A stretch of DNA of 64,000 bases from Antechinus flavipes (lineage: Eukaryota), in the NCBI RefSeq assembly GCF_016432865.1, contig NC_067399.1:48360001-48424000 (forward strand). The letters run 5' to 3'. Below the pieces are notes generated by a model. It did not search any database and was not told where the DNA came from. It saw only the letters and a program-made list of their open reading frames with translations. Positions 8,386 to 39,139 of the stretch are shown here, piece by piece (within the stretch, counting starts at the first letter, position 1; each line of letters starts with the position of its first letter). The position numbers and the translations under genes were made by a program.

Positions 8386-9376
8386 CTGCAAGTCATAGAG
8401 AGGACAATGATCCCGAGGGAAGCTCCCACCAGCCCCGTCAAAAGGAGCCCACCTAGTGAAATGTCTCCCAAGATTCCTCCTGCCCTAGGACTGAACCAAT
8501 TCCTCCCAAGACTAAAATGTCAGCTGTGGGGCACAGATTTACCCATAAGGGATTGCTCCCATTGAAATTTCGCCAGGTGAGAGGCAGCTGGTGGCCCAGC
8601 AGAGAAATGTGCTGGGCTTGGAGTCAGGAAGGCCCGAGTTCAAATTTTACCTCACTTAGGGAAATGTGAACTGAACAAGTCACTTAATCTCTGCCTACTT
8701 CCTCAACTGTTAAGTGGGAATACATGCCAGCCATCTGCCTGGTGACTTGGACAAAGTCAATGAACCTTTTTGGGGCTCAGTGTCCTTGTCTTTTAGTTAC
8801 AGAACTCTGAGCTCCCTCCTAGCTCCAAATTGAGGATCCCAAGAGGATATACCTACTAGAGAAAATTAAATGTTAACTGAGGAAGAAAACACCTTTGTCT
8901 GAGTTGTAAGGAGCCTTGGCGGAGGTAGACGGAAATCCTTAACTTCTTGGTTGCACAGGTATCGGACTCTGTGCCTAGCACTGGCTCACTGCAGGCCTCT
9001 AAAAAAAGTTCCTTTTTCCTATCCCAAGACCGCCAACTTTAAAAGGACTACATTAAGATAGATGCAACATCTACAACACCTTTAATTGAGGGCTTTGAGG
9101 CTTTTAGCCTTTGTACCACTCAGATACAAAGAAGCCAAAAATAAATAAAATAAAATTTAAATAAATAATTAAATAAATGAATTCCCGATCCTCCAGACAG
9201 TTTAAAAGGAGGGGGACGGACTGGATGATCTCGGAAGTTCCTTTTGCCCTAGGACCCTGAAATCTCACGTCTTGGAATAGTGTGTCAGGGTTTTGCTGCC
9301 TGGACTACAGCATCTTTACTTTCTTCATTAAATCATTAGCGCCCCAGCCTGGAGTCACTGCCCTGAAGAGACTCAC

Positions 9377-9487
9377 CTGAAATTTCTTAGAGATCTTGAA
9401 GGCGTGGGCATGGCGCCTTCTGACGTTTTCAGAGGCCTCCCGTAAGGAAAGCTGATTGAACAAGGGAGTTTTGTCATCTGGAAGTGG
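9377..9487 (-). CDS. UTP4: UTP4 coding exon (111 nt)
   Basis: PLPDDKTPLFNQLSLREASENVRRRHAHAFKISKKFQ; long poly-T tract then ctttag|; donor |gtgagt. Confidence 0.95.
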
Positions 9488-10464
9488 CTAAAGACCAAAA
9501 AAAAAAAAAAAAAAAAAAAAGCAATACATGTCAAGCCTTCATTATTCTTAGTTTCTGCTCGTCATCTCCTGAACAGGTCGGTGACCACACTGAATGTTAA
9601 TGACCCAACGGTCACATGCTTCTGGCCCCTCTTCCCAGGCTGTGCCTGAGAATGGCCGGACCCCCTAATCAGATCAAAGGTCAGCCTGGCCAGGGACCCT
9701 GTCAGGGAGAAAACTAGCGACCCCATGCTGCTGCCCCCCGGGAGAACCTGGGCGATCTCCTTGGGACCTAGCTGGGTCTGGGCCCAGCGGGGGAGTCCTT
9801 CCGGTCTCGCTCCCCTCCTGAGGCACTTGCCAGCCAGCTCTCCCACACGAGAGCCCCCCTCAGCCCCGGAGGCGGGCCTCTCACAGAAGTTGTAGTGAGC
9901 CACTCATTCCTGGCCATCTGCTTCCCCCACGTACCCCTCCCCCCCCGCCCGTGTTCACAGACACGACAAACCCCCGCCATGTGCTTCGAGCTTGCTCATG
10001 TGATGAGCACTATTTGCAGAATACCGGGCCGAGGGGCGGGCGTCTCCTTGAGAAAAGCGTGCCAGTGGGATGACTCAAGGCGGCAGCTGGCTGCGCCCGA
10101 AATACAGCCCAGCCCGCCTAAACCCTGGGGATGCAAAAGAGCATTCTGGGAGGCGGATTTCACAGCTCTGCTCGGCTATCCCAGCCATCTGCCTCTCACT
10201 AAGAAGGCTGTGAGGTTTCCAATTCCAGCAGCCGGAGAGCGTCCCTCGGGGTCACCCCGGGCCAAGCCAGTCCTGTCCAAGACATTAAAACCCTGCTCTG
10301 GTTTGCCCCCAGAAGGAGCCAGCTCAGCAAAAAAGCAAACCCAAGCTCTTTGCATTTACCCAGCAATCTCCAGGGCGTTCAGTCAAGTATCACTGCATCT
10401 GGCCCGTCCTGGGCCCCTTTTCGTAGGTGGGCAAAGAAGCTCGTGAAGGAAGGGAGGGACTCAC

Positions 10465-10650
10465 CATGGACTTATCAATGATGCAGAACATGTAGGTGTC
10501 ATGGAGGAGGATGTGGGTGGGCTTCTGGGGGTGGAAAGCGATGTGGGTGATGGGTGTGTCCCTCTCTAGCCAGAGGTAGTGCAGCCCCTGCTTCTGAACC
10601 TTCCGGCTCCAATCTGTGTACTGTTTTTGGGGGATGCTGAATTCAAAGAT
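10465..10650 (-). CDS. UTP4: UTP4 coding exon (186 nt)
   Basis: IFEFSIPQKQYTDWSRKVQKQGLHYLWLERDTPITHIAFHPQKPTHILLHDTYMFCIIDKSM; ttccag| and |gtgagt. Confidence 0.96.
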
Positions 10651-10816
10651 CTGGAAAAGAGCACGAGAAAAGAATCAAGCTTAGTCCTAATGAAGGACCC
10701 TGCACTTCCCTGGGTGCAAATCACAAAGAACTCAGACACCCGTGCAGAGTGGAGAAACGTCCCGAGTCCGAGCCCTTTGATGGTGGATGCTGAGGAAATG
10801 GGAGGGGCCCACCCGC

Positions 10817-10832
10817 TCCGCAGGGGGCGCTA
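10817..10832 (+). promoter_or_regulatory. CTCF-like motif
   Basis: TCCGCAGGGGGCGCTA: perfect 3' part (CAGGGGGCGCTA), two mismatches at the 5' end. Confidence 0.4.
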
Positions 10833-11241
10833 AGAAGGCCACAAGGGCTCTGGCTTTGCTGACCATTCAGTCTGCCCCCCGAGACAGCCAAACAGGAGGA
10901 AATTCGGATAGGATAAGGAGCAGCCATTTCAGAGAGCGCTCCCTCCCCCACCAGCCACCTAAGAATGAGTGTGGTCCGGAGGGCCGCCCCCATCACCGAG
11001 CCCTTTTGTGACATGAGCCAGTAATTTAACTTTCCTGCGTCTACGTTTGTCAAACACCAAGTGGTTGAAGAAGCAGGGATGGTGCAAAGTGAGGGAAGGG
11101 CTGAGATGGTCTCCCAAATCCTGCCCTATCTCATGCTCACCGATGCCGCACTCCAAGCCCACGGCCTATCTGTCCGCCACCAGGCCCCCCACGGGGTCAG
11201 CGCTGACCACCCCAGCCTCCCCGCCCCCAGGGGTCTCCCAC

Positions 11242-11337
11242 CTGTTGGTCTGCGTGCGCGATCACCAGGTTGTTGGTACCAGGTGCGATGGCCAGGGCTG
11301 TCACGGGGAAGTTGTAAGCAGGCACTGTGCAGTGAGG
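11242..11337 (-). CDS. UTP4: UTP4 coding exon (96 nt)
   Basis: PHCTVPAYNFPVTALAIAPGTNNLVIAHADQQ; cctcag| and |gtggga. Confidence 0.96.
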
Positions 11338-11755
11338 CTGAGGAAGACAAAGAGAAGGAGGCGGGAAGCGGCGTGAATGCCCTGCGCTCTCACTGCTCTG
11401 AAACCCCTGCCTGGATTCCGGCGCAGACCCCCATCCTGGGAGGCATCAGTCGGGGGCTGGACATGAGACACAGCCACGTGCAGCTAAAGGCTGACTTTCT
11501 TAGACTTGGCTTGAATTGTCCCTAAATTCTGCTCCCTGAGGTTCCGTGGGAGATGTGGGCAGAGCCGGCCCGAGTGTGGAAGACCTGGATCAGGCCCCAC
11601 TTCTGCCAGATACTGGCTGTGTGACCCTGGCCAGGTCACTTCGCTGCTCAAGGGCCCCTGGGCAGCCCACCACCAAAGACTCCTAAGTTGCACCAATAAA
11701 ATCCTAGGTCTAGACCAAAAATAAATTTATAATTAAAAACAAATCTTGAACCCAC

Positions 11756-11862
11756 CTTCAGATGCTTCAAATCATAGACACTGACTCCATTACTGGGGCC
11801 GGCTGCAGCTAACCAGCTCCCATCTGGGCTCGCTGCCAGCAGAGTCGTGGCCTCCGATGTCC
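11756..11862 (-). CDS. UTP4: UTP4 coding exon (107 nt)
   Basis: TSEATTLLAASPDGSWLAAAGPSNGVSVYDLKHLK; tcacag| and |gtgggt. Confidence 0.94.
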
Positions 11863-14441
11863 CTGTGAAGAGAGAAGAGCTTGAAGGAATCTCTCACTTC
11901 TCCAGTGAACTCTGCTCCCTTATGCCCAGGGAAAATTGCATTTCCCACGAATTCTGCAAATATATCTTCCAGGCTGGCCAGAGGGAGAAAAGAGAAACTG
12001 ACCCAAGGGGGCAGAGACAAGCTCCCTGAAACCCATACTGGCACCCCAGTGTCATATAGATCAATTGTGAAAATGCAAGTGGACAATTTTAACCAACTCC
12101 TTTCCCACCACTTTTTTTTTTTTAAATGAGTAGCAAACAAGTATTCAATTCTATTGACTTGAAGTATCACCAGTCATTTCCATGTCCAACTCTCTGTGAC
12201 CCCAATTTTTTTTTTTTGATAGAGATGCTTGGTCCTTCCCTAGCCCCTTTTACAAAGGAGGAAACTGAGGCAGGCAGGGCCAGAGTCACACAGCTGGTGA
12301 GCATCCGAGGACCAGACTTGATCTCAAGAAGGAAGCTTCCTGACTGAGCCCAGCCCTCTTCACACTAGGCTGTCATCAGGCAGCCCTGACTTCAGCTTTA
12401 CTTTTATTCAGACCATATACAATTAATACAAAAGCATCAACTCTGCAATGAGTTACAGTGAAAGAGAAGGTGGAATAATGCACGAATTAGGCAATAATGC
12501 AAAATGACAAATGTCAAACCGTGTCGCCTCAATAATGCTTCAGAATTTTGAGGAGAGGAATTATGGGTGATCAATTTATGAAGGAACTTTACAGAGGGAG
12601 GAGAGTCACACAGTTAGGAGGCCCTCCTGACTCAGGCTGGCACCCTGTCCCCCTCTGTACTCCCTATCTGGCTGTCCTTTGATGTGCACATCTGATGGGG
12701 TCCCTTGGGCCCCCTCCCCATAGCCTCCAACCCTCATCTCCAGCCTTACTGCATGGGCTTCCACATACCCTGAAATCTGCCCAACTAGACCCCGGCCCTT
12801 TGCCCCGGAGCCCCCAAAGGTGGGCTATGATCTCTTCTTTCCAGTGGTTCATTAGACTCCTCCTCTCCTCCTACAGGGAACCCTTTCTGATCCCAACTCT
12901 GGGGCCTTCCCTCACAGATCAACTTCTATTAACCACTTTGTTCCTATTCTCTGTGCATTCACACCCCACCCCTACTAGAACGGACGCTCCCCCATGAGCG
13001 AGAACTTTTCACTCATGTACTTGCACTGGGCAGGGCGAGCACAGTTGCTTGTTGGCCAATCTGGCTTCCAGGGCTCTTGGCAATCTGGTCAGTCCCATAC
13101 TGACCCTTTGACGTGCCTTAGGCTTCCCTGTGTTTCACTTCCAGCCGCCAGACCTTTCCCCCCTTTTCCTCCCATCCAATGCTCCTTCTGCCAGTCCTCC
13201 ATACCCACAATGTGCTCCCTCCTCTTAGAATTCTCTTTCCTTCAAAACTCTGGTGCCGTCTTCCACAGAAAGATGTTCCTGATTGCTTCCTCTAATGCCT
13301 TACCCCCACCACACCTTGTACTGACTCTGTTTATATACATGTGAATAAATGTGTTCCCCAATAAACCGCAAACTCCTTGAGGGCAGAGACTTGTATTTGT
13401 GTATACCTGGTACCTATCAACCATGCCCAGTTCAAAGCAAGTGTTTGCTGACGGATAAAGGTTAGACTACAAACAGAGGAACCAGAAAGAGATTATTCAC
13501 AGGTTGAGTAAATGGAAAGGAGGTGCTGAGGATTGTTAATATTATTAATAAATGGTCAGATGAGGTTGGGCTGAAGAGATTTGGTGATGGCTGGGTTCTG
13601 AATGACAGAAGAATGTGAATTTGGGGTACATCGTAGGGGCTCCTATTGTTGTTTGGCTTAATAGAAATCATAGGTTTTTAGGTTTACTGGCCCCACCCAG
13701 ATTGGGAAGAAAAACAAGGAATCTCAATCAACTACAAAATGGATGATCAGCCCTTTAAATCGTCCCTGCTGTCACACCTACCTACCCATGGTTTAAACAA
13801 AGTCATGGCTGCAAGAGGGGACCAGAGGGGGCCTCCAGAACTCTCCAGTCCTGCCCTCTGCCCCCCTTGGGAAGCCAGACCCCAAGCAGCATGCTCCTGC
13901 TGTTTCCTTTCCTGTATACATCACTAACAATCTCATAACACGTCCTGCCAGGTGTGTGAAATAGGATGTGGGTGAAAATGGAGCGGGTCTGAGCAGCCAT
14001 TTCGGAAGACCGAGCCAGAGGTCCTGCAGGACAGGCCATCTACTGAGTGAAGCACTGTGGGAAGCAGTTAAAGAAGGTCAGAGGCCACTGCTTTTCTCCC
14101 TAAACTTAAATGAGCTCATGAGTGTAACAGTTATTGAGTAAAACCAGTACACAACAAAAAACAACCACCACCGTGGTGCAAAGGAAGAGCTTTGCATCAA
14201 CTTAACTTTTCCTTTGGTTGAATCATGGAAGGAAAAAAAACCCACTGAGGAAGAAGGGAGAATGCTGCGGAATCTGTCCAATTCAGTCTCCATTCAGCAG
14301 AAATCTCCTCCCCCTCTAAATTGCAACCATCTGGGTGAGTGCTGGGGGGATGGAGCAGGGAGGGGCCCACAACATCTGGGACAGTGAGGAGTAGAAATGG
14401 GAAGAATTCTGACCATGCTCAAGCCAGCAACCAATCCTCAC

Positions 14442-14598
14442 CTGACTGAGGAGGGAAGGTGTGCAGGTGTTTCAAGCTCCCCTCTGACAGCTGGATCACA
14501 TGGAGAGAACCTTGGTTGGAGGCCACAAACAACTTTGTGGAGTCTGCAGAGAACAGAATCTGGAGGGCAGAATTCAGGAGCTTGGGCACTTTTGAAAC
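14442..14598 (-). CDS. UTP4: UTP4 coding exon (157 nt)
   Basis: VSKVPKLLNSALQILFSADSTKLFVASNQGSLHVIQLSEGSLKHLHTFPPQS-G; tctcag| and |gtgagg. Confidence 0.96.
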
Positions 14599-15621
14599 CT
14601 GAGAGCAGGCAAAAAGTAAGAGTCAGCAATCCATTCTCTAGAATTTCCACATCTGAAATAATACTTGGAAAGAAAAACTTTGCCACAGCCAATGAACTTC
14701 AAGATTTCCACAATGTATCTCGCCCTGAGGTGAGGCACCTGTTACATGCTAGAGCGTCCCTCTGCTAATTCATACTTGTCCTTCCTCAACTCTTTTGTCA
14801 AATGCTATCCTTAAGAGCTAGATGAGAATCTTGGCTCCACAATTCACTTGCAGACCAGCGGTTCCTAACTTGGGAGTCTCTGATGTTTTAAAAAACACTT
14901 TGAGGACGGTATTTTCTTTTGTAATCCCATGTATTTTATTTTGTGCCATTTAAAAACATTATTCTGAGGGGTCCATTGGCTTCCCCAGATGGTCAAAGGG
15001 CTCATGACATAAACATGTTAGGAAGCCCAATCTAGCGTGCTCTGGGGCATGTCACCACTCACAACAGAATGGGAATCATGGAAACATGACTGAATAAAGG
15101 AATGAAACAGCACTGAGTAACCTAACTAGGGATCAGGAGCATGAATACAGAGTTGGAATGGAACTCAAGACAAGTAGCACTGATTAAACAACTACTGTGT
15201 GCCAGGCACCTAAGCCCCATCTGTAAAAATGAGGAGTCCGAAGGAGCTAAGGGGCTCACCCGGAACTTTAGGCCTCCTGGGACTTAGCCCCAGGTTCTCC
15301 AATGAGAAGGATCTCTCCTTGTTTCCCCTAGCTTCCCATAAAAATATTCCTGGCCTGAATCATATCATGGGGAGGCTATAAAAACAAATGAGAAAATAAG
15401 GAGGGTAAAAAGTCTTTATGTAGATGGTGGAGGAAGAGAAAGTGGAGGATGACAATGATGAAAATAAAGAGGGGGAAGACAGGAAGAGACCCGAAGGGCT
15501 TCTCAGGGCCTCAGATGCCCACCAACATGCATAGGGCATCTCAAGGAGCCTGATAAGAAAGCCCACGATTCAAAGGTGGGGATTCCAACAAGACAAAGGT
15601 GTAGGGTTGAATCTCACTTAC

Positions 15622-15744
15622 CCTTTTGATGCTCACACTGTTATTTTCATAATTCATCCGGTAAAGATAAAATCTAGAAGCTGTAGAATAAGCTATCCAG
15701 CTTCCACATGGGGAAATACAGCTACAACAGATATTCTCAGGCCC
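15622..15744 (-). CDS. UTP4: UTP4 coding exon (123 nt)
   Basis: GPENICCSCISPCGSWIAYSTASRFYLYRMNYENNSVSIKR; tctcag| and |gtaagt. Confidence 0.96.
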
Positions 15745-17836
15745 CTGAGAATGGAAGAATCAGAGAAGACATTAAATAAAATGGTAACAGAAGGCTCACC
15801 TTGGCTTGGGGGCGCCTCAAGGAACTATCACTTGATCCCAACAAAGGGTCATTGCAGTTGGGAGGTCAAGACTTCTCAGGCAAAAAAAGAGGCTTGAAAA
15901 TCCCAGCAGCGCTGCTCCCCCAGCATCCAACAAAATGCACCGTTTCCCCTCGTTTGGGTAAAGAAGGTGGAGGTGGAGGTGGAGGGAGTAAATCAGAAAG
16001 AGGCCAGATCACTAACACATGCTTGCTGAATGAATGAATTCCTATCTCCTGTTGCAGAGGGGATTCCTGTAGAGTAATAGAGGAGGCCCGAAATCCCTTC
16101 CAACACTAAAATTCTATGGTTTTGGGAGGCTTTTAGAGCCATTTACTTTATGTTTTGGTAGTTATAAATATACTTTAAAGAATGATACTATTTGAAATGT
16201 AACTGGTGAAAACTATTCAATACCATTTTCTATGACTATAATGCATTCCATTACTGGGTTCAACAAACTGCACTGTTGCATGGGATTAAATGCTATCCTT
16301 CCACAAGCACCTACTAATCACGTAGCAGGCTCTGGGCCAGAGATGGGGACGCCGGGCTTAAACAATGAGGGACATAAACACAACTCACATAGAAACAAAC
16401 ACCAGGCCAACGGGCTTGGGATGGGGTGGAACGAAGAGGATTAGTCCCTGGGGACCGGGAAGGTTTTATGCAGGAGGAGGAAACGAAAGAAGAGGAAACG
16501 AAGAAGGACTCTGCGAAGGAATGTGGCGTTCTCTGCCAGGTCTGGTGGGGCGAGGCCTCCCCTGCATGGGGGGCAGTCAGGGAAAAGGTGCAGAAAGCAT
16601 GGAAGGGCAAAGGCCAGTCTGCAGGAGTGCAAAGTGGGGGGAGGGCAGGAGTGACCAACGGAAAAGCTGGCTGGAGCCAGGCCGTGAAAGGCTTTGAAGG
16701 CCACACAAAGCAACAGGGGAGTGACCTGGGCAGGCTCTGGGAAAGTCACCCTGGCAGCGGCAAAGGGGAGAGAACACAGCCGGAGATGATTCACAGGTTA
16801 TCCCCATAGCATCCGGGTGAGAGAGGAGGGACCCAAAGTGGGCTGGGGACATCTGAGTGTGCAGAAGGACGAGGGCAAACGAGGGGAGCCCAGCAGGTGA
16901 GAGAGGAGTCAGGGCTGCCACAAAATTACCTGAGGATCAATGTAAATGACACTGAATGAATGTAAACCAGCTTGCAGGAAAACCTGCCAGGGACTGCAAC
17001 CAACTGCAGCCCCCCCTTTCCCCTCAGGGACCTTGGACAACTCCAGCACCCCCCCCCTCAGGTCTGATTCTATCCAATACCAGATCAGGAGAAAAGGGCA
17101 GGGCGGGGATCCACGACAGGGTGCTCCTACAGCCAGGCCCAGTCCTGGGAGTAAAGCCCCAAACCCTCCCAAGCCTACACCTAGCTTCCTGGGGAGCCCG
17201 CCCGCTCGGTGGGCCTGTTCCTTGGGCAGAGTGCCTGCTTACAGTGCGACAGCTTCGAGGGCTAAGGCTCGCTATGTCATTTTGGTAAAGACAAGGTAAC
17301 CAAACCTGCAGAGACCCAGAAGGCCCAACAGCAAGGGTGCAGAAAGAAAGGGCCAAGACCAAGCCCCCGGGGAGAGAGTCCCCCAGTCAGGGGCTGCAGA
17401 GAGCTCAGGAGGGGCCCAGAACCGGGAGGGTTGGAGGCTGGACTTAATGATGAGCTCAGAGCCAGACTGCACAGGACTGAGGGAGCGGAGCCCACAGGCA
17501 AAGAGGGGAGCTTTTCCAAGATAGAGGCCAATTGGGTGAACTCTCATGCTGTAGAGAAAAAGCTCATAGACAAACAGATCTGAGAGAAAGAGGGAAGGAC
17601 TGTGGGAGCTTTCTGGGGACAGGACACATCGAAGTCAGTTGGCTCTGGTACACCACAGTGTCAAAGAAACAGAGGTCACACCTTGCCATTGATAAACCAG
17701 CTAACTGCACAGAGATGGCACTCAGTCTGTATTTGTTGGATGAACCAGTGAATCAATTAATGAATTACACGTAAAATGAGGTAATTTCCTACCCTGTATT
17801 TCTGGCCATGTGCATTAAGCTTAAGCTGTTTCTTAC

Positions 17837-17901
17837 CTTTTTTTTAAGCTGTAGCAAATGTTCTGCATTTCTAGAGAGTGGAAGGATGTCCTCATTCTTT
17901 C
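17837..17901 (-). CDS. UTP4: UTP4 coding exon (65 nt)
   Basis: KNEDILPLSRNAEHLLQLKKK (human recalled as KNGDTLPLSKNADHLLHLKTK); ttccag| and |gtaaga. Confidence 0.94.
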
Positions 17902-19012
17902 CTGGAACAAGAAATTCCACTAAGGATTTCCCTCTTAATGAAGTTACTCCCCACAGGATTGAAGTACACTTTCCTCCCTCAAACCACTTGATTATGTATG
18001 AGAAATACCTTGAATCCTCACCAGAGTGGGATGAGGCCTATGAGAACGAGGCAGCTGTTTGGCTGGCCCGCCACTGGCTAGGTCCCTCACTGGGGCTAGG
18101 GGAGAGGGAAGCTTTCTGCTCCGCCCTGGACCCTCTCCCAACCAATCATTAAACTGGAACAACTCCACCCATGATCTTGTATCAGGAGAATTTACCAGCC
18201 CTGCCTACAGAGTGGAAGCAGATTGAGCCTGTCCTCTCATTTACTTGTGCAGTGAGGGACCTAGATCATAACTGCTATTTCCATGATTCTTCAAGATTTG
18301 CCCTGTGAAAGTAAATACAATTATCCCCCTGCTTTACAGATGAGACTCTGAGAGCATAAGGAATCTGCTCATGGTCATCTTGCTAGTGTCCAAAGGCAGA
18401 ACTCTGAACTTAGGGGCTTCCGAAGCCCAATTCCTTTATTCTAATCAATGAGAAAGTCTTTGAGCCAGAAGCACTAAAAGCCCTTTTTATGGCTCCCCAC
18501 CATTGTGCACAATGTAAGCCAAGTCACTCCTGGCTCCTGTCCCTCCTCTGTAAAAAGAGGTGGCTCCTTTTGAGCTCTAAGTTTCTGGATCTGGTTTATG
18601 TCATTTCTCTAAATTTCAGCTACTTAAGATCTACAAAACAAGAGGGCAAGACCAGGTGATGTCCTGGTGACCCTGTCAATTTTAAAATTATGTATATATA
18701 AACCCTACACTGTCTCCATTTAACAATAGCAGGGCCAAAAACCTAGAGCAGGCATCTATATCAGCTTCCCAACCCTGCCTGGGACTATGGCTCAGCAGAG
18801 ACAGACTGGGGATTCTGAGTTCCCTACTCTTCCTGTGGCTAGGCTCTTGGGTCTGAAGGTGGGGGCCAGGACATGGGGCACCCAAGAGTATGCATTTCGT
18901 AGAAATTTCCATTTTTCCAGATCATTCCAATGGACACTTTCTTTCCATGGCTCTGATTTGAGTTTTTTCTCCAGTCTATAACTTATTCCCAAGAAGAAAG
19001 GGCTCAGCTCAC

Positions 19013-19109
19013 CAGCTGCTTCAGTGGCTCCCAATCGCCAAAGTTCCAAACGCTGAGGAAACTGGAAGAGGAGGAGCTGCATCTTCTTAGCACAGGAGAT
19101 GAGATGCCG
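19013..19109 (-). CDS. UTP4: UTP4 coding exon (97 nt)
   Basis: RHLISCAKKMQLLLFQFPQRLELWRLGATEAA-G; ctacag| and |gtgagc. Confidence 0.95.
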
Positions 19110-19780
19110 CTGTAGCCAAGAAACAATCAGCATCAGAGTACTCTTTAAATTTCCCACATACGAGCTTAAGGAAAACATCTCAGTACGTTATACAAAGTTG
19201 GAACAAAAGGGAATTAACAAATTCACAAAATGTTTTTCTTTTTTGCTCAATTTAACTATTCTTCAAAACAGAATAATGTAAACAAGAAAAGGAAAAATTG
19301 GACTAAACAAAATAAATATTGGAGTTTGCCTAAAGGATAGATAATGGGCCTTCCAGCTCCATAAGTCTGAACCTGCAGAAGGGAGAAAACACCCATCCTG
19401 CTCACCTCCCCAGGTAGGGATCATAGGAATAGAGTATTAATTTAGCTGAAAAGAAATAGTTAACTGATAACCAAATAAATACTTTGTAAAAAGGGCCCGC
19501 AAACTAAAGATAAAGGAGACAGAAATGATCTTTGCTGTCATTATAAAAATCACTTTTTTTATATGTAGTCATAACAATATTTGGAATCTAACTCAAAGAA
19601 GGGAAGATGTCCAAAGTTCTAAAAGGATAGGTGGCATTTATTTTCTTATAATGGCAATTGAGAACACACTGACAACCTCCTCCATTCGCCTAATTTCTAA
19701 TGTCTAAAAAGTTTTTATAGGAATAGACACAGGCACGATGGGGAATGGGTGTGCAAAGGACGGGGGTTTCGGTCTCTTAC

Positions 19781-20044
19781 GTGTGGGAAGGTGATTTTCC
19801 GCAAGGCCGCGTCGTAATTCTTGACCTCCACCTTCTCCATGAGGGGGCGGATCACGAGGTGGGCGTCCACGCCTCCAGAGATCAGCGCCGTGGGGCTGTG
19901 AGCCACACAGCGCACGTCGTGCGTGTGATGCTGGAAGGGCTTTGTCCTCACCCACTGGCTCTGCTTGCCATCCGTCCTCGAGGCGATCAGCTGGAAGTGG
20001 AATATGGTCCCCTCGGCCGTGCCCACCACCATGCTGTCTTCTTT
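19781..20044 (-). CDS. UTP4: UTP4 coding exon (264 nt; appears to equal human exons 7+8 fused)
   Basis: KEDSMVVGTAEGTIFHFQLIASRTDGKQSQWVRTKPFQHHTHDVRCVAHSPTALISGGVDAHLVIRPLMEKVEVKNYDAALRKITFPH is uninterrupted; tgccag| and |gtaaga. Confidence 0.96.
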
Positions 20045-21414
20045 CTGGCAGGAGGAAAGAGTCGGTGAGCCCGGTCAGCACAGCTCAGGAAAGCTCGCCG
20101 CCATCAGCCGGCTCCTTTCTGCTGCGGCCACTCCAGCTTAGGACGTTGTGGTTACTTTCTGCCTTTGGTTCTTACGCGTTTATCTTTGACAGAAGTTAAA
20201 ATTTATGATAAAAATGTAGGGGCTGCTTGTAATGGAAGAGGAGGATGGAGGAGGAGGAAAGAGGAGGAAGAGAAGAAAAAGAGGAGGAAGAGTAACACCC
20301 AAGTGTACAAGGCCAATGGAGCCAGAGTCAACTGCAGAGTGTTCACCAACAGCCAGGTCACAGCACCCTCTGCTGGCCACTCATGCCCGCCGCGCTCCCC
20401 CTGCTGCTACTTCTGGAGCAGCCCTGGCCTGGCCTGAGGGCCCAAGCCCAGGGACCGAGTGCCCCGCTCAGACCCTGCAGCCTCTGCCTCTGTCCCCTGC
20501 TCTACCCGTCCTCCACACCCACACGGGTCATTCTTCTGCCTAGAGGAAGCCGGCCAGGGATCTCCGCAATACAAGACGAGCTGAATTACAAACGGGGCCT
20601 GGAAACTCTCAATGTTAAGTCACTGAGTTCTGAAGACCGTGGGCATGCTGGGAGTCAGTGGGCAACACGGCCCGAAGGCCAGACCAGGGCACACTAGCTG
20701 TGTGTCTCACCCAAGTCATGGAAGTCGGGAGCCTGAGCTTCCTCCTTTGTGAATGGGAGATTACCCCAGATGACCCTCAAGGTGCCTTCCAGCTTTAAAT
20801 CCTCTTATACACCTTTGGGGAGGGAGGATGAATGTTGGGGCAGGTGGCAGCTGTAAGTAGGCCGAAATCCCTGAGCGCAGAGCAGAGCTGGGCGGTGCCA
20901 TCCCCAGCACCTGCAGAGGGCAAGCCCGAGGCTGCTGGGCACAAAGGAGTGAATGTAGGGTGGAAGTGATTTCTGAGCTAATTTTCATTTTATTGCTCAA
21001 AACCCCACCAACCACAGCTCTAAAGAACGCAACTCCCTTTCTTCTCTGCTTGGTGAAGAGCCGGCAGGGCCCCACTGGCCTGGGACACGACAGAGGGAGC
21101 CTGTGGCCGGCGGCTGGAAAGCCTGAGATCCAAGCCGAGGGTAGACACTTGTGGGGTGACCTCTGGCAACGGCATTTGGCTCCCGGAGCCTCAGTCTCCT
21201 CGTTTGTAAAAATGGAGATAATATTTCTTGCCCCCTTGTTGTGAGACATTGTGTCACACAAAACATAGCACAAACCAGATAACACAAGATAAACCTGAGT
21301 TATTACCAATAGGGAAGGAAATCATCCCCACGAGTCTTCCTATAGGTCACTGCCCTGAGAGGAGGCAGACGCACAGAAATCAGGTGATCAGCTTAGCTAA
21401 GTTTATTCCCTTCT

Positions 21415-21565
21415 CACTCAGCTAGACAGTGCAGTGGACAGAGCACCAGCCCCGGAGGCAGGAGGACCCGAGTTCAAACCCAGCCTCAGACACTTAATTA
21501 TCACTAGCTGTGTGGCTTCGGGCTAGTCCCTTAACTCCAACTGCCTCACCAAAAGGGAAAAAAAA
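21415..21565 (+). mobile_element. Marsupial SINE (WSINE1-like)
   Basis: A-box/B-box head (gcagtggacagagcacc...gagttcaaacccagcctcagacactta), core, A-tail. Confidence 0.8.
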
Positions 21566-22487
21566 TGCCTCAAGACCTCACAATAAACTGTCTGGTTGAC
21601 AGGCCCCATCTCTGCCTAGAGGCTGAACCAGCAGGGAGTATTAAAAAAAAAAAAACAGCAAACTCTTTAAGTCCCAACTCAAATCCCCCCTTCCATAGCA
21701 GCCTGCCCTAAGCTCTCTGAATTCCAGCACTTTCCTTCTTTTAATAATTTCCAATTTTTCCTGTAAATAGCTTGCTTTGTATATATGCGTTAGCACTGGC
21801 TTCCCCCATTAGACTGTAAGCTCCTTCAGGGCAGGACTACCTTGGGCCTTTTTTTGTATCCTTACTGCTTAATGTGCAGCGCCTGGCCCACTGGTCCTTG
21901 CTGCTCAGGCATTTCAGCTGCATCGATTCTTTGTGAACCACTTAGGGTTTTCTTGGTAAAGATACTAGAGTGATTTGCCTTCTCCATAATAAGCACTTAA
22001 TAAATGTTTAATGATTCTTATTGATTAGGTCTTCAAATAATGGAAAGCATGAAAAGCAAAAGGCTTTGAAAAAACTTTGTGAAACTCCAAAAGGGAAAAA
22101 GTTTGAAAGTGGGAAAATTGGCGAAATACATGTATGTGGAAATTTCAATTACATCACATGGCAAGCAATGTACTGAGTTCATCCTACATAACTTCAAAGA
22201 TGACTTAAACCCAACCATTTTATAGAGCAATTTGGAACAAAGTCCAAAGGGTTATAAAATCATGCTTACTCTTTACCCCAACAATACTACTACTAGGCAT
22301 GTATCCCAAGAAACCCAAAAAAGAAAAAAAAAAGAGGGATAAGAGGGGGAGAGAAAGGACCTATATGTACAAAAATATTTATAACAATTCTTCTCAAGAC
22401 CAAGAATTGGAAATAGAGGGGATGTCCATCAATTGGGAATGGCTGAATAAAATAGAATATGTAATTATGATAGAATACTATTGTTCT

Positions 22488-22678
22488 TTTTTTTATTTTA
22501 ACATCAATCTCTCCCCTAGACAGCAAGCAATCCAATATAGTTAAGCATGTGCAATTCTTCTATACATCTGTCCCCATTTATCATGCTGCATAAGAAAAAT
22601 CAGCTCAAAAAGGAAAAAAATGAGGAAGGAAAAAAAAAGCAAACAACAAAAAAGGTGAAAATATGATGTGATTCATGA
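22488..22678 (-). mobile_element. L1 3' fragment nested in an older plus-strand L1 (~22250-23010)
   Basis: 14-bp TSD AATACTATTGTTCT (22474-22487 and 22679-22692); host L1 sequence on both sides. Confidence 0.8.
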
Positions 22679-23662
22679 AATACTATTGTTCTATAAGAAG
22701 TGAGGAGCAGGACGCTTTCAGAGAATCCTCCAAAGTCCTCCATAAGCTCATGCAAAGTGAACAGTACGGTGTGCAAAGTAATAGCAATGTTGTGGGATGA
22801 TCACCTGTAAATAACATTGCTATTCTCAGCAATTCGGTGTTCCACGACTACTCTGAAAGATTTAAGATGAAAAATGCTATCCATATGCAGAGCAAAAAAT
22901 TGATTCTGTCTGAATACAGGTTGAAGCATACTTTTTTTTTTTCTTGAGAGTTTTGTGGAGGTTTTTTATGGGGGAAGAGGGAAAATCTGTGTTATGGGGG
23001 AAGAGGGAAAATCTAAGAATGAAAAGATAGGCCCAGATAAACAAAATTGCTCAAGCTACTTTAACACAAATCTATTCAAATCCATTTTCTAAACCATCAC
23101 TTCAAAGAGATGGGAAATGAGGAGTCAGTCCTCCAAGAAACCTCACAGACTCTTGATCTCCTTCCAGAAACAGGAGCTTCTACGTTGCAAGATCTGGGGG
23201 AAAGTCCTCTACAGATGAACTAGCCAGGTCGGTGAGGAGTGAGAAGGCACAGGTGGCTGACATCAATCCTGGATGTACCTCCCTAGGCCTACCCTCCAGA
23301 ACTACCCTTAATGGCAAGACTGTTTACAAACCAATTCCGCAGGTATTATCGCCTGTCATGTGTCCCAACAAAGAACATCCTGCTAAGTATCCTTGCCTTC
23401 ATGAAGGTGACAATCAGCAGGGAAGATAGGATATACTCTTCAAGGAATAATATCATACAACAGTCGTGTAAGAGCATCCAGTGGGAAGAAATCTCATTCT
23501 AGCCAACGCTGAGGTCAGTAAGAGACAGAAGCTGAGGCCCCGAGAGGCCAGAGGGCCTGCCCAGAGTCCCACAAGAGCTAAGCCTGGGTTCTGGCCCTCC
23601 GACCCCATCTTCCCCGCACCATGGACTTCATGCACAAACTGCATCCGCAGGGATGCACTCAC

Positions 23663-23874
23663 CTCCGCCACAGCTATGGACAGCACGTCAGAATTGGAGA
23701 GGGGATGTGTCTGCATCAGGGTGCCGGTCTCCGAGTCCCAGAACTGGACCACGCCAGCCGAGTCCGTGCTCACGACGGTCCCGTCTGACAGGAAGGCCAC
23801 CCCCCACACGACACACCTGCGCCGATGCGGGCCCGGGTGCCTCCGATCCATTAGCATCTTTTGGGTGGTGCTGC
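23663..23874 (-). CDS. UTP4: UTP4 coding exon (212 nt)
   Basis: STTQKMLMDRRHPGPHRRRCVVWGVAFLSDGTVVSTDSAGVVQFWDSETGTLMQTHPLSNSDVLSIAVAE; tctcag| and |gtgagt. Confidence 0.96.
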
Positions 23875-24207
23875 CTGAGAAACAAGCACCCCAAGAGTCA
23901 GAGAAAAGACCCTCTGGCCTATGGCCCTTCTCCAGCCCCACCACCCCAACAGTGAAAAGTCTGAGCTACAGCCAGGGATGGTGAGACAAGAATGAATCAT
24001 GACCACTTCAGAGATGATGAGTGACGAGGGGGAGCCTCAATGAGCTTGGTGGGCTAGCTCTCCATTGCTAGTCTCCCAGATTGAAGGGGGCTCACCCATT
24101 ACTGCCCATGAGAGAGGATGCTCATGAATTAGTTCTTTGGGCCCAATCTGTGAAGGGAGGGTGCCTCAGTACAAACATAAGAGAAGTGGTTATAAATCAT
24201 GAGTTCT

Positions 24208-24345
24208 TCTTTTTGGCAAGGCAATTGGGATTAAGTGACTTGCCCAGGGTCACACAGCTACTAAGAAGTATCAGAGGAAGGATTTGAACTCAGGTCTTCC
24301 TGGCTCCAGGGCTGGTGCTCTATCCACTGCAGTCCCAAGTGCCCC
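24208..24345 (-). mobile_element. Marsupial SINE (WSINE1-like)
   Basis: T-tail, then ggattaagtgacttgcccagggtcacacagc...tttgaactcagg...ggtgctctatccactg. Confidence 0.8.
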
Positions 24346-24727
24346 AATTTCTAAGAAATTATAAAGGAAGAGAGCTCATGAAGCAGCTGCTAAAAAGGTC
24401 AAAGGGAGGCTGAGCTATAAAGGCATTCAAAATGCTTTATTCCAAGGCCTCAAATTGCTAAGATTTGTGCTTATTTTTCAGCTTACAGCACAAAATTTCT
24501 TTAAAGCAAAAAATAAAGTCAGGTAGAATAAGCCAGACAATTGTCATGTTTTATGACATACCCCCAGACCCAGCTTCCACCATGAGCTGAGAGAAACGCC
24601 TCGCCGATAATGCTCTGAAATCACAATTGGTCACAGCATTCACCAGAGTTTGGAAACCTGTTCGTGAAGCCCCCAAACCTTGCTCCAAACACAAGAGATG
24701 TGCAACCTGAACTGAGAACAACAGTAC

Positions 24728-24817
24728 CTGATTTAACATCAAGCACAGCAACATAATCTATGGAGCCAGCTGCAATGTGGGTACCAGATGGATGCCAGCT
24801 TAATGAGAGTATTCGAC
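24728..24817 (-). CDS. UTP4: UTP4 coding exon (90 nt)
   Basis: RILSLSWHPSGTHIAAGSIDYVAVLDVKS; tgccag| and |gtactg. Confidence 0.96.
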
Positions 24818-25318
24818 CTGGCAGGGAGAAAACAAAAAAGAATTTGGTTTTCAAAGAAACAGAGTCCCAGTTTTCTCCAACAACTAGCTGTGGCGTGAAT
24901 CTTCTATCACCTTACCCCTCCTTCTCTGTATTCTAGCACGTTATCTAACTCTAGTATCTCTGCCTTGAAGTCCTACATTCCTGTATAACATCCTCAGCCC
25001 TGAGCTGAGGATCTAATAGTACTAATTGAGGAATACTGGAGAGAATGTAACAAATTCCAGTCCTTATTTGTTAGGAGACGCCACATTAAAGCAACAAGTC
25101 ACATAAGCTACTGCTTTTAATAAATCTTAGGAATATTCTTGGGATTTCTGTTTTGGATTTGGTTTTCTAGTCTGGGGGACCTGACATGGATCACCTTGGA
25201 CATCTGCGGACAAGGGGGATAGTCCCTCTCAGAGACCAGATAAGACATCTCTTGCAACAAGCACAAAAGTAACAATTCCTGTGAGAGTCATTCATCAGAC
25301 CCCTAAAATGCCCTTTAC

Positions 25319-25403
25319 CTTTCTGTCGTTCTAAAGTCCGCTCAAGCTGGATTTTGTCTGGGGCAACATGGAACAGCTTCACAGACCCATCCTCACAACC
25401 TAT
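25319..25403 (-). CDS. UTP4: UTP4 coding exon (85 nt)
   Basis: IGCEDGSVKLFHVAPDKIQLERTLERQK-G; tgacag| and |gtaaag. Confidence 0.96.
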
Positions 25404-26659
25404 CTGTCAGGAGAAAAAGAGAAATAGAAAAGATGAACATATGTGAAAATAAATAAAAATGCTAAAGTTTTTTTTTTTAATTAAAGAAAATATTTTGAAA
25501 GAGAGAATTCTGGAGTCAGGAAAACCACATCCTGGTAAACAAAACAAGCTCATCAGTATTCTAAAGAGAAAGGTTACAGTGATGTCCATCAGGGTATTTG
25601 CTCAGAGCGAAGCACAACAGACACACTAATGGTTGAGCCAGAAAGACCACTGGGCTTGGGAGTCAGGAAGGAGGAGCTAAGTTTGGACCCTAATGATCAC
25701 TAACTCCTTAAATTCCTTAATTCCTCTGACTCAGCTTCCTAATTTCCTAGATGGGAAGAGAAAATGAAACTACTTACAACACTGTGACAGAATGCTCCAA
25801 ACCAGGAATCAAGGGGAGAGGCTTCTGGAAACCCCTGAAGCTCCCTCTCCTTTCTACCGAAGGTGACGAAGGGAGAGCTGTGACTGGGCCCAAGCATTCT
25901 GGAGAACAATGCGGCAGAACGCCAAAAGTCGATACATACTCCATGTGCTTCGTAATATCTTCACAGAGTGGCATTATTTTATGGTAGCAAAATACAGGAA
26001 AAATACAATTGTAGTACATGAATGGGCTGGACTTTTACTGACCATATTGGAAGATGACAAATACCAAGAATTCAGGGAAATTTGGAAGAGCACATATGAA
26101 TTAAACCAGAGAGAAGTAACTGGGATGAGGAGAACAAGTAGGTTACCAGACAACAGAATGTCCATCAATGTTATGATTAATCAAAGTTTTAGGTGAAATT
26201 GAAATATAACTCATTCTTCTTATAAAGGGGTGAGGCAATGACCTATAGTTAATAAATAAAACAAATACTAACAAATAAGGCCAACGTGTTCATTTATTTT
26301 GCTTAGCTATATTTGCTTTATGGGAGGATTTTAGGGGAAAAGTCATTGGGAAATAAAACTAATATAAAAAGAGCATTAATAGATATTTTTAATTTTTTAA
26401 GAAGACAATTAAGGAAAAATAAATGAATATAAATAGGCTAAAAACAAAGTATGAATAATCTCAATATGAGCTCCAATTCCATCACTGGGGATATTCCAAA
26501 AGCAGGATAGGGTAGAAATCTCTACCAAAGAACCATATTCTGAAAGAAAATTTTCCTTAATTCTCTATTGTTATGCAGAAAGAAACCTCAGTGAGCCTGA
26601 AAAAAAACCTCATAATATGTATTTATAGTAATAATCCCCTTTCCCCCCCATACACTAAC

Positions 26660-26851
26660 CGCAAGATATGAGCCACTTGGGTCAGCAGCCATGCTCCAAA
26701 TGGGACCACCAAAGCCATCAACAGAATATTTGACACTCAGCTTTTCCAAGTCATACTCAATAATGTCACCATTGAGTCCAGCACTGAAGAGCCGCTGTCC
26801 TTTTGCCCAGCACATAGCTTCTGTGGATCGACCCTCATGGCCTGGGAAATA
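26660..26851 (-). CDS. UTP4: UTP4 coding exon (192 nt)
   Basis: YFPGHEGRSTEAMCWAKGQRLFSAGLNGDIIEYDLEKLSVKYSVDGFGGPIWSMAADPSGSYLA; ttgtag| and |gttagt; phase 0/0. Confidence 0.96.
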
Positions 26852-27085
26852 CTACAAAAACACAGTAATACTTCAGTTGTTAAAAAATCATGATCATTTA
26901 TTAGCATCTACTGAGTAGTCAGACAATGCATAGAATTGCTATCACCCAAAGCAGATGAAACAATCTGATTTGTTTCTGAAAATATTTAGATGTTTTGTTT
27001 CTGTTCTTATCAGTGTATGTTTAGTTTTGAGAAGCACTGCCAACCCCTGCTTGAGATATCCTGGTTCTGTGATTATCAGGAGGTC

Positions 27086-27698
27086 CTATAACTTTATTTT
27101 CCAGAACATGTATGTGGACAATTCTTCAACATTAGCCCTTGCAAAACCTTCTATTTCAACTTTTCCCCTCCTTCCCTCCACCCCCTCCCCTAGATGGCAG
27201 TCAGACCAATACATATTAAATATGTTAAAGTATATGTTAAATACAATATATGTATACATATCCACAGTTATTTTGCTGCACAAGAAAAATCAGACTTAGA
27301 AATAAGGTAAAAATAACCTGAGAAGGAAATCAAAATGCAAGCAGACAAAAACAGAGGGAGTGGAAATGCCATGTTGTGATTCACACTCATTTCTCATTGT
27401 ACTTTCACTGGGTATAGCTGGTTCTATTCATTACTGCTCTACTGGAACTGATTTGGTTCATCTCATTGCTGGAGAGGGCCACGTCCATCAGAATTGATCA
27501 TCGTATAATATTGTTATTAAAGTAAATAATGATCTCCTGGTCCTGCTCATTTCACTCAGCATCAGTTCATCTAAGTCTCTCCAGGCCTTTCTGTAAATAT
27601 CCTGCTGGTCATTTCTTACAGGACAATAATATTCCATAACATTCATATACCACAATTTATTCAGCCATTCTCCAATTGATAGGCATCCATTCAATTTT
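27086..27698 (-). mobile_element. 5'-truncated L1 (3' UTR plus end of ORF2)
   Basis: Homologous to 28133-28760 over ~600 bp; AWRDLDELMLSE remnant; no clear TSD. Confidence 0.88.
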
Positions 27699-27893
27699 GT
27701 GGAAATATATTTAGAAGAATTGCACGTGTTTAAGCCATTCAATTATTTGCTGTCTGGAGGTAGAAAAATTTGGAACACAAGATTTTGTAAGGGTGAATGT
27801 TGAAAACTGTTTTTGTCTGTATTTTGAAAAATAAAAAGCTGTTGTTATTTTTTAAAAAATCTATACTATAATAATGAGAATAGCAACAACAAA

Positions 27894-27898
<5 letters not shown>

Positions 27899-27934
<36 letters not shown>
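27899..27934. repeat. (CA)n microsatellite
   Basis: About 18 CA units. Confidence 0.95.
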
Positions 27935-27939
<5 letters not shown>

Positions 27940-28132
27940 TTCTGAACGTTCCTATGGGGACTAAGGAATACTTTTATGGAAGCTGCTGGCCTAAACAGGG
28001 AAGAAAATTAAAAGTGCTTAAACAATCAATCAATCAGCAAGAATCTAGTTCTTTAATATATATAAGGCTCTGTGCCCAGTACTGGATAATACAAAAAACC
28101 AAAAGTAGTCCCTGCCCACAAGGAACTTAAAA

Positions 28133-29026
28133 AAATTTTTTTTTACTTTTTATTATTTTTTTTATTATAGTTTTTTATTTACAAGATATATGCATGGGTA
28201 ATTTTTCAGCATTGAGAATTGCAAGACCTTTTGTTTCAACTTTCCCCCTCCTTGCTCCCACCTCCTCCCCTAGACGGCAGATTGACCAATGGATGTTAAA
28301 TATGTTGAAGTATAAGTTAAATACAATATATGTATACATGCCCAAACAGTTATTTTGCTGTATAAAAAGAATCGGACTCTGAAATAGTGTACAATTAGCC
28401 TGTGAAGGAAATCAAAAATGCAGGCGGGCAAAAATAGAGGGATTGGGAATGCTATGTAGTGGTTCGTAGTCATCTCCCAGAGTTCTTTCATTGGGTGTAG
28501 CTGGTTCTCTTCATTATTGAACAAATGGAACTGATTTGGTTCATCTCACTGTTGAAGAGGGCCACGTCCATCAGAATTGATTATCATGTAGTATTGTTCT
28601 TGAAGTATATAATGATCTCCTGGTCCTGCTCATTTCACTCAGCATCAGTTCCTGTAAGTCTCTCCAGGCTTCTCTGGTCTCAGGCCTCTCATCCTGCTGG
28701 TCATTTCTTATAGAACAATAATATTCCATAATATTCATGTACCAACCATTCTCCAATTGATGGGCATCCACTCACTTTCCAGTTTCTGGCCACTACAAAC
28801 AGGGCTGCCACAAACATTTTGGCACATACAGGTTCCTTTCCCTTCTTTAAAATCTCTTTGGGGTATAAGCCCAGTAGAAACACTGCTGGATCAAAGGGTA
28901 TGCACAGTTTGATAACTTTTTGAGCATAGTTCCAAATTGCTCTCCAGAATCGCTGGATGTGTTCACAGTTCCACCAACAATGTATCAATGTCCCAGTTTC
29001 CCACATCCCCTCCAACATTCCGCATT
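28133..29026 (-). mobile_element. 5'-truncated L1
   Basis: T-rich tail at 28136-28170, ORF2 C-terminal remnants (HCWWNCEHIQRFW; AWRDLQELMLSE), 11-bp TSD GGAACTTAAAA (28122-28132 and 29027-29037). Confidence 0.92.
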
Positions 29027-29419
29027 GGAACTTAAAATTCTAACAGAGTAACTATATATAAACAAATGGGTAAATGCTGAATAGTTGAAAGGCAGCCATA
29101 GTAGGTAGAAGTGGCAAGGTCAGGGAGCAGCAAAGGCCTAGATAGAGAGACCAACAAAGATCTGGCCTTTTACCAATTTTATTATAATTTTTTAAATATT
29201 TCACTTCCCCCCAATTAAACGGAAAAACAATTTTTAACATTTGTTCTTCCAAATTTTTGAGTTCCATGTCCCACCCCCACCAACTAGTAAAGCATCAAAA
29301 TGCTTGAAGACAAGCCATTTGATATAAGTTATAAATGAGCAAAATGTATTTCCTAGTTAATCATGTTGTGAGAGAAAACACCAAGAAATCCCAAGAAAAA
29401 TAAAGAACATTTTATCAGT

Positions 29420-30976: not shown

Positions 30977-31017
<41 letters not shown>

Positions 31018-39080: not shown

Positions 39081-39139
39081 CCACGTGCGCGCGCTTTGAC
39101 CCCGGAAGCAGTTGTTGGCCCCACGGAGCCGGAAGTGCG

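What the first reader, a model, noticed from the sequence alone, without database searches (positions are those of the whole stretch)
19781..20044. Candidate precise intron loss in UTP4: one 264-nt exon where human appears to have two
Seen: this locus has 16 exons (1 non-coding + 15 coding) yet encodes the full 686 aa, and c.739-1002 is a single exon. Recalled, not verified: human UTP4 has 17 exons with a break at c.910/911 (172+92 nt). That point maps to 19873/19872 and reads GGAG|GC, an AG|G proto-splice context with no residual intron bases. Clean intron loss is rare in mammals and is usually ascribed to recombination with reverse-transcribed mRNA of germline-expressed housekeeping genes, which fits UTP4 in an L1-rich genome.
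Basis: partly seen in the sequence, partly recalled or inferred. Interest (0 to 1): 0.7.

Follow-up and report, generated by a model that had tools for sequence, protein, structure and literature searches.

The report
Marsupial UTP4 lost one short intron
This marsupial's UTP4 ribosome-assembly gene has cleanly lost one short intron that platypus, turtles, birds and placental mammals still carry; the loss is real and old but an ordinary example of a known process.

Summary
Window 20044..19781 (minus strand) is one 264-nt, phase-0 exon with AG/GT borders. It encodes UTP4 residues 247-334.

The window's 15 coding exons match the RefSeq UTP4 protein of Antechinus flavipes at 682 of 682 whole codons.

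- **Outgroups keep an intron here.** Platypus and leatherback turtle split the same 264 nt into 172 + 92 nt. The intron is short (118 and 102 nt), phase 1, and sits at c.910/911. A bird-like contig has a 150-nt intron at the same base. Read-through ORFs from placental-like, bird-like, squamate-like and more distant vertebrate contigs lose homology at the same residue.
- **Marsupials lack it.** Koala and Dromiciops carry the fused 264-nt exon.
- **Nothing else differs.** The other 14 intron positions and phases are identical in the window, koala, platypus and turtle; the 11 resolved in Dromiciops agree too.
- **It is not an assembly artefact.** Independent contigs from two related species cross the site without any insertion, and an RNA contig splices the exon to its neighbours.

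So this is a precise loss of an ancestral intron, older than the split of Dromiciops, koala and dasyurids.

Opossum DNA could not be reached, so a marsupial-stem loss and a later loss cannot be told apart. The mechanism (cDNA recombination or microhomology deletion) is unresolved. The lost intron is the shortest in the gene.

Notes from this scan report similar intron losses on other DNA of this genome (ARAF, COQ4).

The parts
19781..20044 (-). UTP4 coding exon 6, c.739-1002, 264 nt, 88 codons. It is the fusion of the ancestral 172-nt and 92-nt exons.
   Evidence: AG/GT borders. Open frame. Matches human UTP4 residues 248-334, E 1.9e-45. 88/88 identical to Antechinus flavipes UTP4 P0242. An RNA contig of run X14 covers 19781-20046 without gaps.
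19872..19873 (-). Site of the lost intron: c.910|911, inside Gly304 (G|GC), reading TCTGGAG|GCGTGG.
   Evidence: Platypus has TCTGGAG|gtaagt...ttttcag|GCATGG (118 nt). Dermochelys has TCTGGAG|gtatgg...tttcag|GCCTGG (102 nt). The bird-like L001 has TCTGGAG|gtgagg...ttccag|GCCTGG (150 nt). The window, koala and Dromiciops are contiguous here.
20045..23662 (-). Retained intron 5 (3618 nt), upstream of the fused exon.
   Evidence: Exon table. The contigs of X4 and X10 run from the exon into this intron up to 20202.
19110..19780 (-). Retained intron (671 nt), downstream of the fused exon.
   Evidence: Exon table. The X4 contig spans 19156-20202 without gaps. The X14 RNA contig skips this interval.
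23663..23874 (-). UTP4 coding exon 5 (c.527-738, 212 nt).
   Evidence: The loose end of the X14 RNA contig at 20046 reads as the reverse complement of coding sequence for VLSIAVA (residues 240-246), which lie at the end of exon 5.
19013..19109 (-). UTP4 coding exon 7 (c.1003-1099, 97 nt).
   Evidence: The X14 RNA contig lies on 19012-19103 and is joined to exon 6.
8269..37086 (-). The whole UTP4 coding region: 15 coding exons, 2061 nt, 686 codons plus stop.
   Evidence: tblastn chains and splice refinement. 682/682 whole codons identical to P0242, the Antechinus flavipes UTP4 isoform X1.

Best explanation
The 264-nt exon is what remains after a precise loss of an ancestral short intron, about 90-150 nt long and in phase 1, between the first and second base of Gly304 of UTP4. 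The loss happened in the marsupial lineage before Dromiciops, Diprotodontia and Dasyuromorphia diverged, and it became fixed. The protein did not change in length and no intron bases remain. That much is shown; I put the loss itself at about 0.97.

The mechanism is inferred. The reading I think most likely, at about 0.5, is the classical one. A spliced UTP4 transcript, from a housekeeping gene presumably expressed in the germline, was reverse-transcribed. The cDNA then recombined with the gene over a short tract covering only the exon 6/7 junction. This erased the smallest intron and left both neighbouring introns in place.

The confidence figure below is for the event and this mechanism together.
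For: Shown:
- Platypus L004 and Dermochelys L007 have 16 coding exons, with a 172 + 92 nt split by 118-nt and 102-nt phase-1 GT..AG introns. The window and koala L006 have 15 coding exons with a single 264-nt exon; Dromiciops L005 has the same single exon, with its last exons unresolved by my script. The other 14 intron positions and phases are identical in the window, koala, platypus and Dermochelys, and the 11 resolved in Dromiciops agree.
- The junction sequences show a clean excision.
- The bird-like L001 has a 150-nt intron at the same base.
- Read-through ORFs whose exon parts match ruminant, bat, carnivore, rodent, bird, turtle and gecko UTP4 break at residue 303/304. They imply introns of 90-150 nt.
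- Contigs of X4 (19156-20202, no gaps) and X10 (19461-20202, all 15 gap letters lie in introns) cross the site. The X14 RNA contig is spliced exon 7 to exon 6 to exon 5.

For the mechanism:
- The excision is exact.
- The lost intron is the shortest of 15 in both outgroups.
- Mammalian intron losses are conventionally ascribed to recombination with L1-made cDNA or retropseudogenes (PMC7605268).
Against: - There is no 3' bias: this is intron 6 of 15, at 44% of the coding sequence.
- No neighbouring intron was lost with it.
- I could not search for a UTP4 retrocopy or measure germline expression.
- A preference for small introns and exact excision are equally expected from deletion during double-strand-break repair (PMC3698931 and PMC3020277).
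- No didelphid DNA was obtained, so 'marsupial stem' is not shown.
Confidence: 0.5

Rival explanations
1. The same real, fixed intron loss, but made by a genomic deletion. A double-strand break in or near the ~100-nt intron was repaired by microhomology-mediated end joining between the AG|G at the donor and the AG|G at the acceptor. Only the exact, in-frame deletion survived selection.
For: - All outgroup junctions read AG|gt...ag|GC, a 3-nt direct repeat (AGG). Dromiciops now has GGT at the wobble position, which would have made it 4 nt.
- The lost intron is the smallest in the gene, 118 nt and 102 nt, rank 1 of 15 in both outgroups.
- It is a single-intron, mid-gene loss with both neighbours kept.
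- The model is published for flies and worms, and was suggested for galliform birds (PMC3698931; PMC7605268).
Against: - The microhomology is not exceptional. Eight other introns in platypus and ten in Dermochelys have an equal or longer junction repeat and were all kept.
- The process has not been demonstrated in mammals (PMC7605268).
Confidence: 0.4
2. The intron is not ancestral. It was gained independently, or once followed by complex history, in monotremes, eutherians and sauropsids, and marsupials keep the original uninterrupted exon.
For: A paper argues for intron gains in the placental ancestor (PMC3257199, listed). I did not obtain a named non-amniote locus.
Against: - The same base, the same phase and a similarly short length are seen in platypus, turtle, a bird-like contig and placental-like fragments.
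- This reading needs at least three parallel gains at one nucleotide, against a single loss.
- Fragments only 47-62% identical to the named tetrapod and coelacanth proteins also lose homology at residue 304.
Confidence: 0.02
3. It is an artefact or a non-orthologous copy: an assembly error (for example cDNA-guided polishing), or a partly processed retrocopy rather than the true UTP4 locus.
For: The best index holder, run X1, laid nothing on the exon.
Against: - Fourteen other introns are present at conserved positions.
- CHTF8 is a neighbour both here and in the bird-like L001.
- Independent contigs of organisms C and E carry flanking intron sequence and a contiguous exon.
- The koala and Dromiciops assemblies agree.
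Confidence: 0.01

Closest known systems
Precise intron losses catalogued in mammals (Coulombe-Huntington and Majewski 2007, known to me only as cited in PMC7605268, PMC3698931 and PMC3020277; Churakov et al. 2020, PMC7605268, 87 verified cases)
   Same: Exact excision with the flanking exons fused in frame. A very short intron. A housekeeping gene. The loss is shared by related species. No sign of gain.
   Different: This case lies on the marsupial lineage, which those screens barely sampled: only 1545 opossum RefSeq introns were used as targets. No paper in the searched library links intron loss with UTP4 or CIRH1A. The 2020 supplementary table is not held, so prior listing cannot be excluded.
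Reverse-transcriptase-mediated intron loss (cDNA or retropseudogene recombination model)
   Same: Base-exact removal. A therian genome with L1 activity (established knowledge). A presumably germline-expressed gene.
   Different: Neither of the model's classical signatures, 3' bias and co-loss of adjacent introns, is present.
Microhomology-mediated intron loss (van Schendel and Tijsterman 2013, PMC3698931)
   Same: A small intron. An AG|G repeat at both junctions. A single isolated loss.
   Different: The junction microhomology is ordinary for this gene. The model was established in nematodes and flies, not mammals.
Other marsupial intron losses noted by this scan in the same genome (ARAF s1-180307, COQ4 s1-189908)
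   Same: A short intron present in platypus, placentals and reptiles but missing in marsupials. Those follow-ups judged their cases routine.
   Different: A different gene. Those notes report every marsupial checked, whereas here no didelphid could be checked. I did not re-test those notes.

Membership tests
UTP4 / cirhin (t-UTP component of the small-subunit processome) | Sequence orthology to UTP4 over the whole protein. | tested here: met
   The exon matches human UTP4 residues 248-334, E 1.9e-45. All 15 coding exons match Antechinus flavipes UTP4 P0242 at 682/682 whole codons. Named UTP4 orthologues align along their full length.
Precise (exact) intron loss | An intron at the homologous position and phase in outgroup lineages. 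| tested here: met
   Platypus 118 nt, Dermochelys 102 nt and the bird-like L001 150 nt, all phase 1 at G|GC of Gly304.
Precise (exact) intron loss | Flanking exons fused in frame, with no inserted or deleted coding bases. | tested here: met
   172 + 92 = 264 nt. The junction is TCTGGAG|GCGTGG. The protein alignment has no gap here.
Precise (exact) intron loss | The locus is the orthologous multi-exon gene, not a retrocopy. | tested here: met
   Fourteen other introns lie at conserved positions and phases. The CHTF8 neighbourhood is shared with the bird-like contig.
Precise (exact) intron loss | Absence seen in at least two related species or independent assemblies (the criterion used in PMC7605268). 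| tested here: met
   The koala and Dromiciops assemblies. Contigs of organisms C and E.
Reverse-transcriptase-mediated intron loss | A bias towards the 3' end of the gene. | tested here: not met
   The lost intron is number 6 of 15, at c.910 of 2061.
Reverse-transcriptase-mediated intron loss | Concerted loss of adjacent introns. | tested here: not met
   Both neighbouring introns (3618 nt and 671 nt) are retained.
Reverse-transcriptase-mediated intron loss | Germline expression of the gene and a source of cDNA or a retrocopy. | not testable with these tools
   Only one RNA contig of unknown tissue was seen. The marsupial genomes could not be searched for retrocopies.
Microhomology-mediated intron loss | Raised microhomology at the exon-intron junctions compared with retained introns. 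| tested here: inconclusive
   The score is 3 of 4 with a 3-nt repeat. That equals or falls below eight (platypus) or ten (Dermochelys) retained introns of the same gene.
Microhomology-mediated intron loss | The lost intron is small. | tested here: met
   It is the shortest of 15 introns in both platypus and Dermochelys, and 90-150 nt in all fragments.

The most novel reading that the evidence does not exclude
Didelphids (Monodelphis, Gracilinanus) and perhaps shrew opossums still carry the intron. The loss would then be a homoplasy-poor rare genomic change marking Australidelphia, including Dromiciops. Together with the other marsupial losses seen in this scan, it would add to a little-catalogued wave of short-intron losses that could separate the cDNA and microhomology mechanisms in an amniote.
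Probability: 0.2. Interest if true: 0.35.

Novelty: new member of a known kind. Interest (0 to 1): 0.25.

Why it matters
Precise intron losses are rare in mammals; the largest screen I could read verified 87 cases. They are nearly free of homoplasy, so each well-dated case is a useful clade marker and one more data point in the unsettled debate between cDNA recombination and break-repair deletion.

This case has clear polarity: monotreme, reptile, bird and placental outgroups all keep the intron. It is shared by three marsupial orders, and it removed the shortest intron of the gene.

It changes nothing in the UTP4 protein, and the public gene models already imply it. Its value is as a catalogue entry, not as new biology.

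Tried and rejected
**Opossum and other loci that could not be reached**
- The Monodelphis protein P0172 is not on record as a gene.
- Its 686-residue core, P0172:11-696, is not in the collection.
- A second listing of the marsupial protein cluster showed the same 15 members.
- Macrotis, Latimeria and Myotis proteins are not on record. The Tenrec and Microcaecilia loci came back without DNA.
- As a result there is no didelphid, no peramelemorphian, no named placental locus and no named non-amniote locus.

**Other dead ends**
- Run X1, the best index holder, laid nothing on the exon, probably because of the filter.
- The protein-atlas look-up meant to name the fish-like fragments gave only generic WD40 clusters.
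- Rfam found nothing in the window or the outgroup loci, so the lost intron hosted no known RNA.
- The Pfam scan of the exon alone gave only sub-threshold WD40 hits.
[quoted passage not shown] A search for the human exon count found nothing.

**A correction to my own working**
- My first identity estimate of about 90% to dasyurids was distorted by alignments running into introns. The exon-by-exon check gave 682/682 to Antechinus flavipes.

- I did not build or search a joined spliced model; exons were handled one at a time.
- I fetched no human contig. I did not follow up the Homo sapiens proteins P0179 and P0182 or the primate-like fragment P0027.
- I left the third word-based protein search unused, because no contig look-ups remained to exploit it.

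Full report
**1. The observation**

On the minus strand, window 20044..19781 is a 264-nt stretch preceded by a polypyrimidine tract and AG, and followed by GTAAGA. It is an open 88-codon frame in phase 0.

Pfam sees only sub-threshold WD40 propeller matches in this piece. A phmmer search of solved structures aligns it to residues 248-334 of human UTP4 (7mq8 chain LN, 686 aa), E 1.9e-45. That fixes the numbering: the exon is c.739-1002, and c.910|911 falls at 19873|19872, inside Gly304, where the window reads TCTGGAG|GCGTGG.

The window contains no N.

**2. The gene**

tblastn with marsupial UTP4 proteins gave 15 colinear pieces between 37086 and 8269. I refined their borders with a script that requires GT/GC..AG and agreement with the guide protein.

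The result is 15 coding exons summing to 2061 nt, all with AG/GT borders. Checked exon by exon, 682 of 682 whole codons are identical to the RefSeq UTP4 isoform X1 of Antechinus flavipes (P0242). The figures are 674/682 for Sarcophilus and 667/682 for Sminthopsis.

So the window is, or is nearly identical to, the yellow-footed antechinus, as earlier notes of this scan say, and the gene model is already public. I built and searched no joined spliced model.

**3. Is there an intron at this point elsewhere?**

A word search with the exon returned short ORFs called on genomic contigs. These read ...ALISGG, then 30-50 unrelated residues, then xDxxLVIRPLMEK...FPH. That is what read-through of a short in-frame intron looks like.

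The exon parts of these fragments are identical or close to named UTP4 proteins of ruminants, bats, carnivores and others, a hamster, a rabbit, ducks, eagles, a turtle and geckos. Homology stops at residue 303/304 of those proteins. The implied introns are 90-150 nt long.

More distant fragments, only 47-62% identical to the coelacanth or other named proteins and of unknown taxon, break at the same residue.

None of these fragments is human, judged against the human sequence. I did not follow up the one primate-like fragment (P0027).

**4. Named loci**

The profile-free search and a second word search gave full-length, named orthologues. A cluster listing gave eight marsupial species. Gene loci with DNA were obtained for four species:

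| Species | Locus |
|---|---|
| Platypus | L004 |
| Dromiciops | L005 |
| Koala | L006 |
| Leatherback turtle | L007 |

The same script produced their exon tables.

- Platypus and turtle have 16 coding exons. The 264 nt are split 172 + 92 by phase-1 introns of 118 and 102 nt.
- Koala and Dromiciops have a single 264-nt exon, like the window.
- The other 14 intron positions and phases are the same in the window, koala, platypus and turtle. One downstream Dromiciops exon was missed by my script, so 11 of the other 14 junctions were resolved there, and they agree.

The junctions:

| Source | Sequence at the site |
|---|---|
| Platypus | TCTGGAG\|gtaagt...ttttcag\|GCATGG |
| Turtle | TCTGGAG\|gtatgg...tttcag\|GCCTGG |
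| Bird-like contig L001 (CHTF8-like ORF, weak Pfam hit, about 2.7 kb from the exon) | TCTGGAG\|gtgagg...ttccag\|GCCTGG, 150 nt |
| Window | TCTGGAG\|GCGTGG |
| Koala | TCTGGAG\|GCGTGG |
| Dromiciops | TCTGGAG\|GTGTGG |

One ancestral intron and one loss explain this. The alternative needs at least three gains at one nucleotide.

**5. Not an artefact**

- A 1047-nt contig of run X4 (organism C, about 1% different) covers 19156-20202 with no gaps.
- A 760-nt contig of X10 (organism E, about 7% different) covers 19461-20202. All 15 of its gap letters lie in the flanking introns.
- Both contigs carry intron sequence on both sides of the exon, so they are genomic.
- A 1448-nt RNA-like contig of X14 lies on exon 7 and exon 6 and skips the 671-nt intron. 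Six diverged letters sit at the joint. Its loose end reads as the end of exon 5.
- Run X1 laid nothing on the exon. The tool says a filter removes some records, so this is not evidence either way.

Together with the koala and Dromiciops assemblies, this excludes an assembly error or a retrocopy.

**6. Timing**

The loss predates the common ancestor of Dasyuromorphia, Diprotodontia and Microbiotheria.

No didelphid, peramelemorphian or caenolestid DNA could be obtained. A marsupial-stem loss and a loss after the didelphid split therefore remain open.

From branch lengths (my own knowledge, not a test) I put about 0.8 on the marsupial stem and about 0.2 on the later branch.

**7. Mechanism**

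Nothing here shows the mechanism.

- The lost intron is the shortest of the 15 in both outgroups: 118 nt against a next-shortest of 161 nt in platypus, and 102 nt against 303 nt in the turtle. The chance of that at random is 1 in 15.
- Its junction microhomology (AG|G, 3 nt) is ordinary for this gene.
- The loss is mid-gene, and both neighbouring introns are kept, so the classical signatures of cDNA-mediated loss are absent.
- The preference for short introns is reported for mammals, and both models predict it (PMC3020277; PMC3698931; PMC7605268).
- There is no burst of marsupial-specific substitutions next to the junction. Conversion from a diverged retropseudogene might have left one.
- Rfam finds no RNA family in the outgroup loci or the window, so no known RNA was lost with the intron.

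I put about 0.5 on recombination with a reverse-transcribed spliced transcript and about 0.4 on microhomology or end-joining deletion.

**8. Comparison with what is known, and verdict**

This is a textbook precise intron loss of the kind catalogued in mammals. PMC7605268 lists 87 verified cases, and its marsupial sampling was minimal.

I found no paper in the searched library that links intron loss with UTP4 or CIRH1A. The relevant supplementary table and the 2007 catalogue are not held.

The scan's notes report similar marsupial intron losses in this genome, at ARAF and COQ4. I did not re-test those notes.

It is an ordinary new member of a known kind.

Noticed in passing
window 39001-40000: A CpG island (GC 0.65-0.78, CpG observed/expected 0.8-1.06) lies 2-3 kb upstream of the UTP4 ATG exon, between UTP4 (minus strand) and the CHTF8/DERPC genes further on. 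It may hold the UTP4 promoter and non-coding first exon, and could be a shared bidirectional promoter.
   Followed up: no
window 20234-20297: A purine-rich (GA/GAA-type) low-complexity stretch in the intron just upstream of exon 6 attracted hundreds of unrelated contigs in every run laid, with summed depth up to about 14,000. It is a common simple repeat and not part of the finding.
   Followed up: no
L001:111-299 and L001:3001-3444: In a compact bird-like contig, a CHTF8-like ORF (weak Pfam Ctf8 hit) lies about 2.7 kb from the UTP4 exon. If the hit is real, the UTP4-CHTF8 neighbourhood seen in this marsupial window is conserved in sauropsids.
   Followed up: partly
L004 (platypus) and L007 (Dermochelys): There are small in-frame length differences in otherwise conserved exons. 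Platypus coding exon 2 is 189 nt rather than 192, and exon 10 is 126 rather than 123. Dermochelys exon 11 is 160 rather than 157.
   Followed up: no
window 18950-20350, run X1: The run that holds 94% of the sampled words of this stretch in the index laid no contig on the exon or its flanks, only on the simple repeat. This is presumably the silent human-likeness filter, and it means the same-species read check is missing.
   Followed up: no
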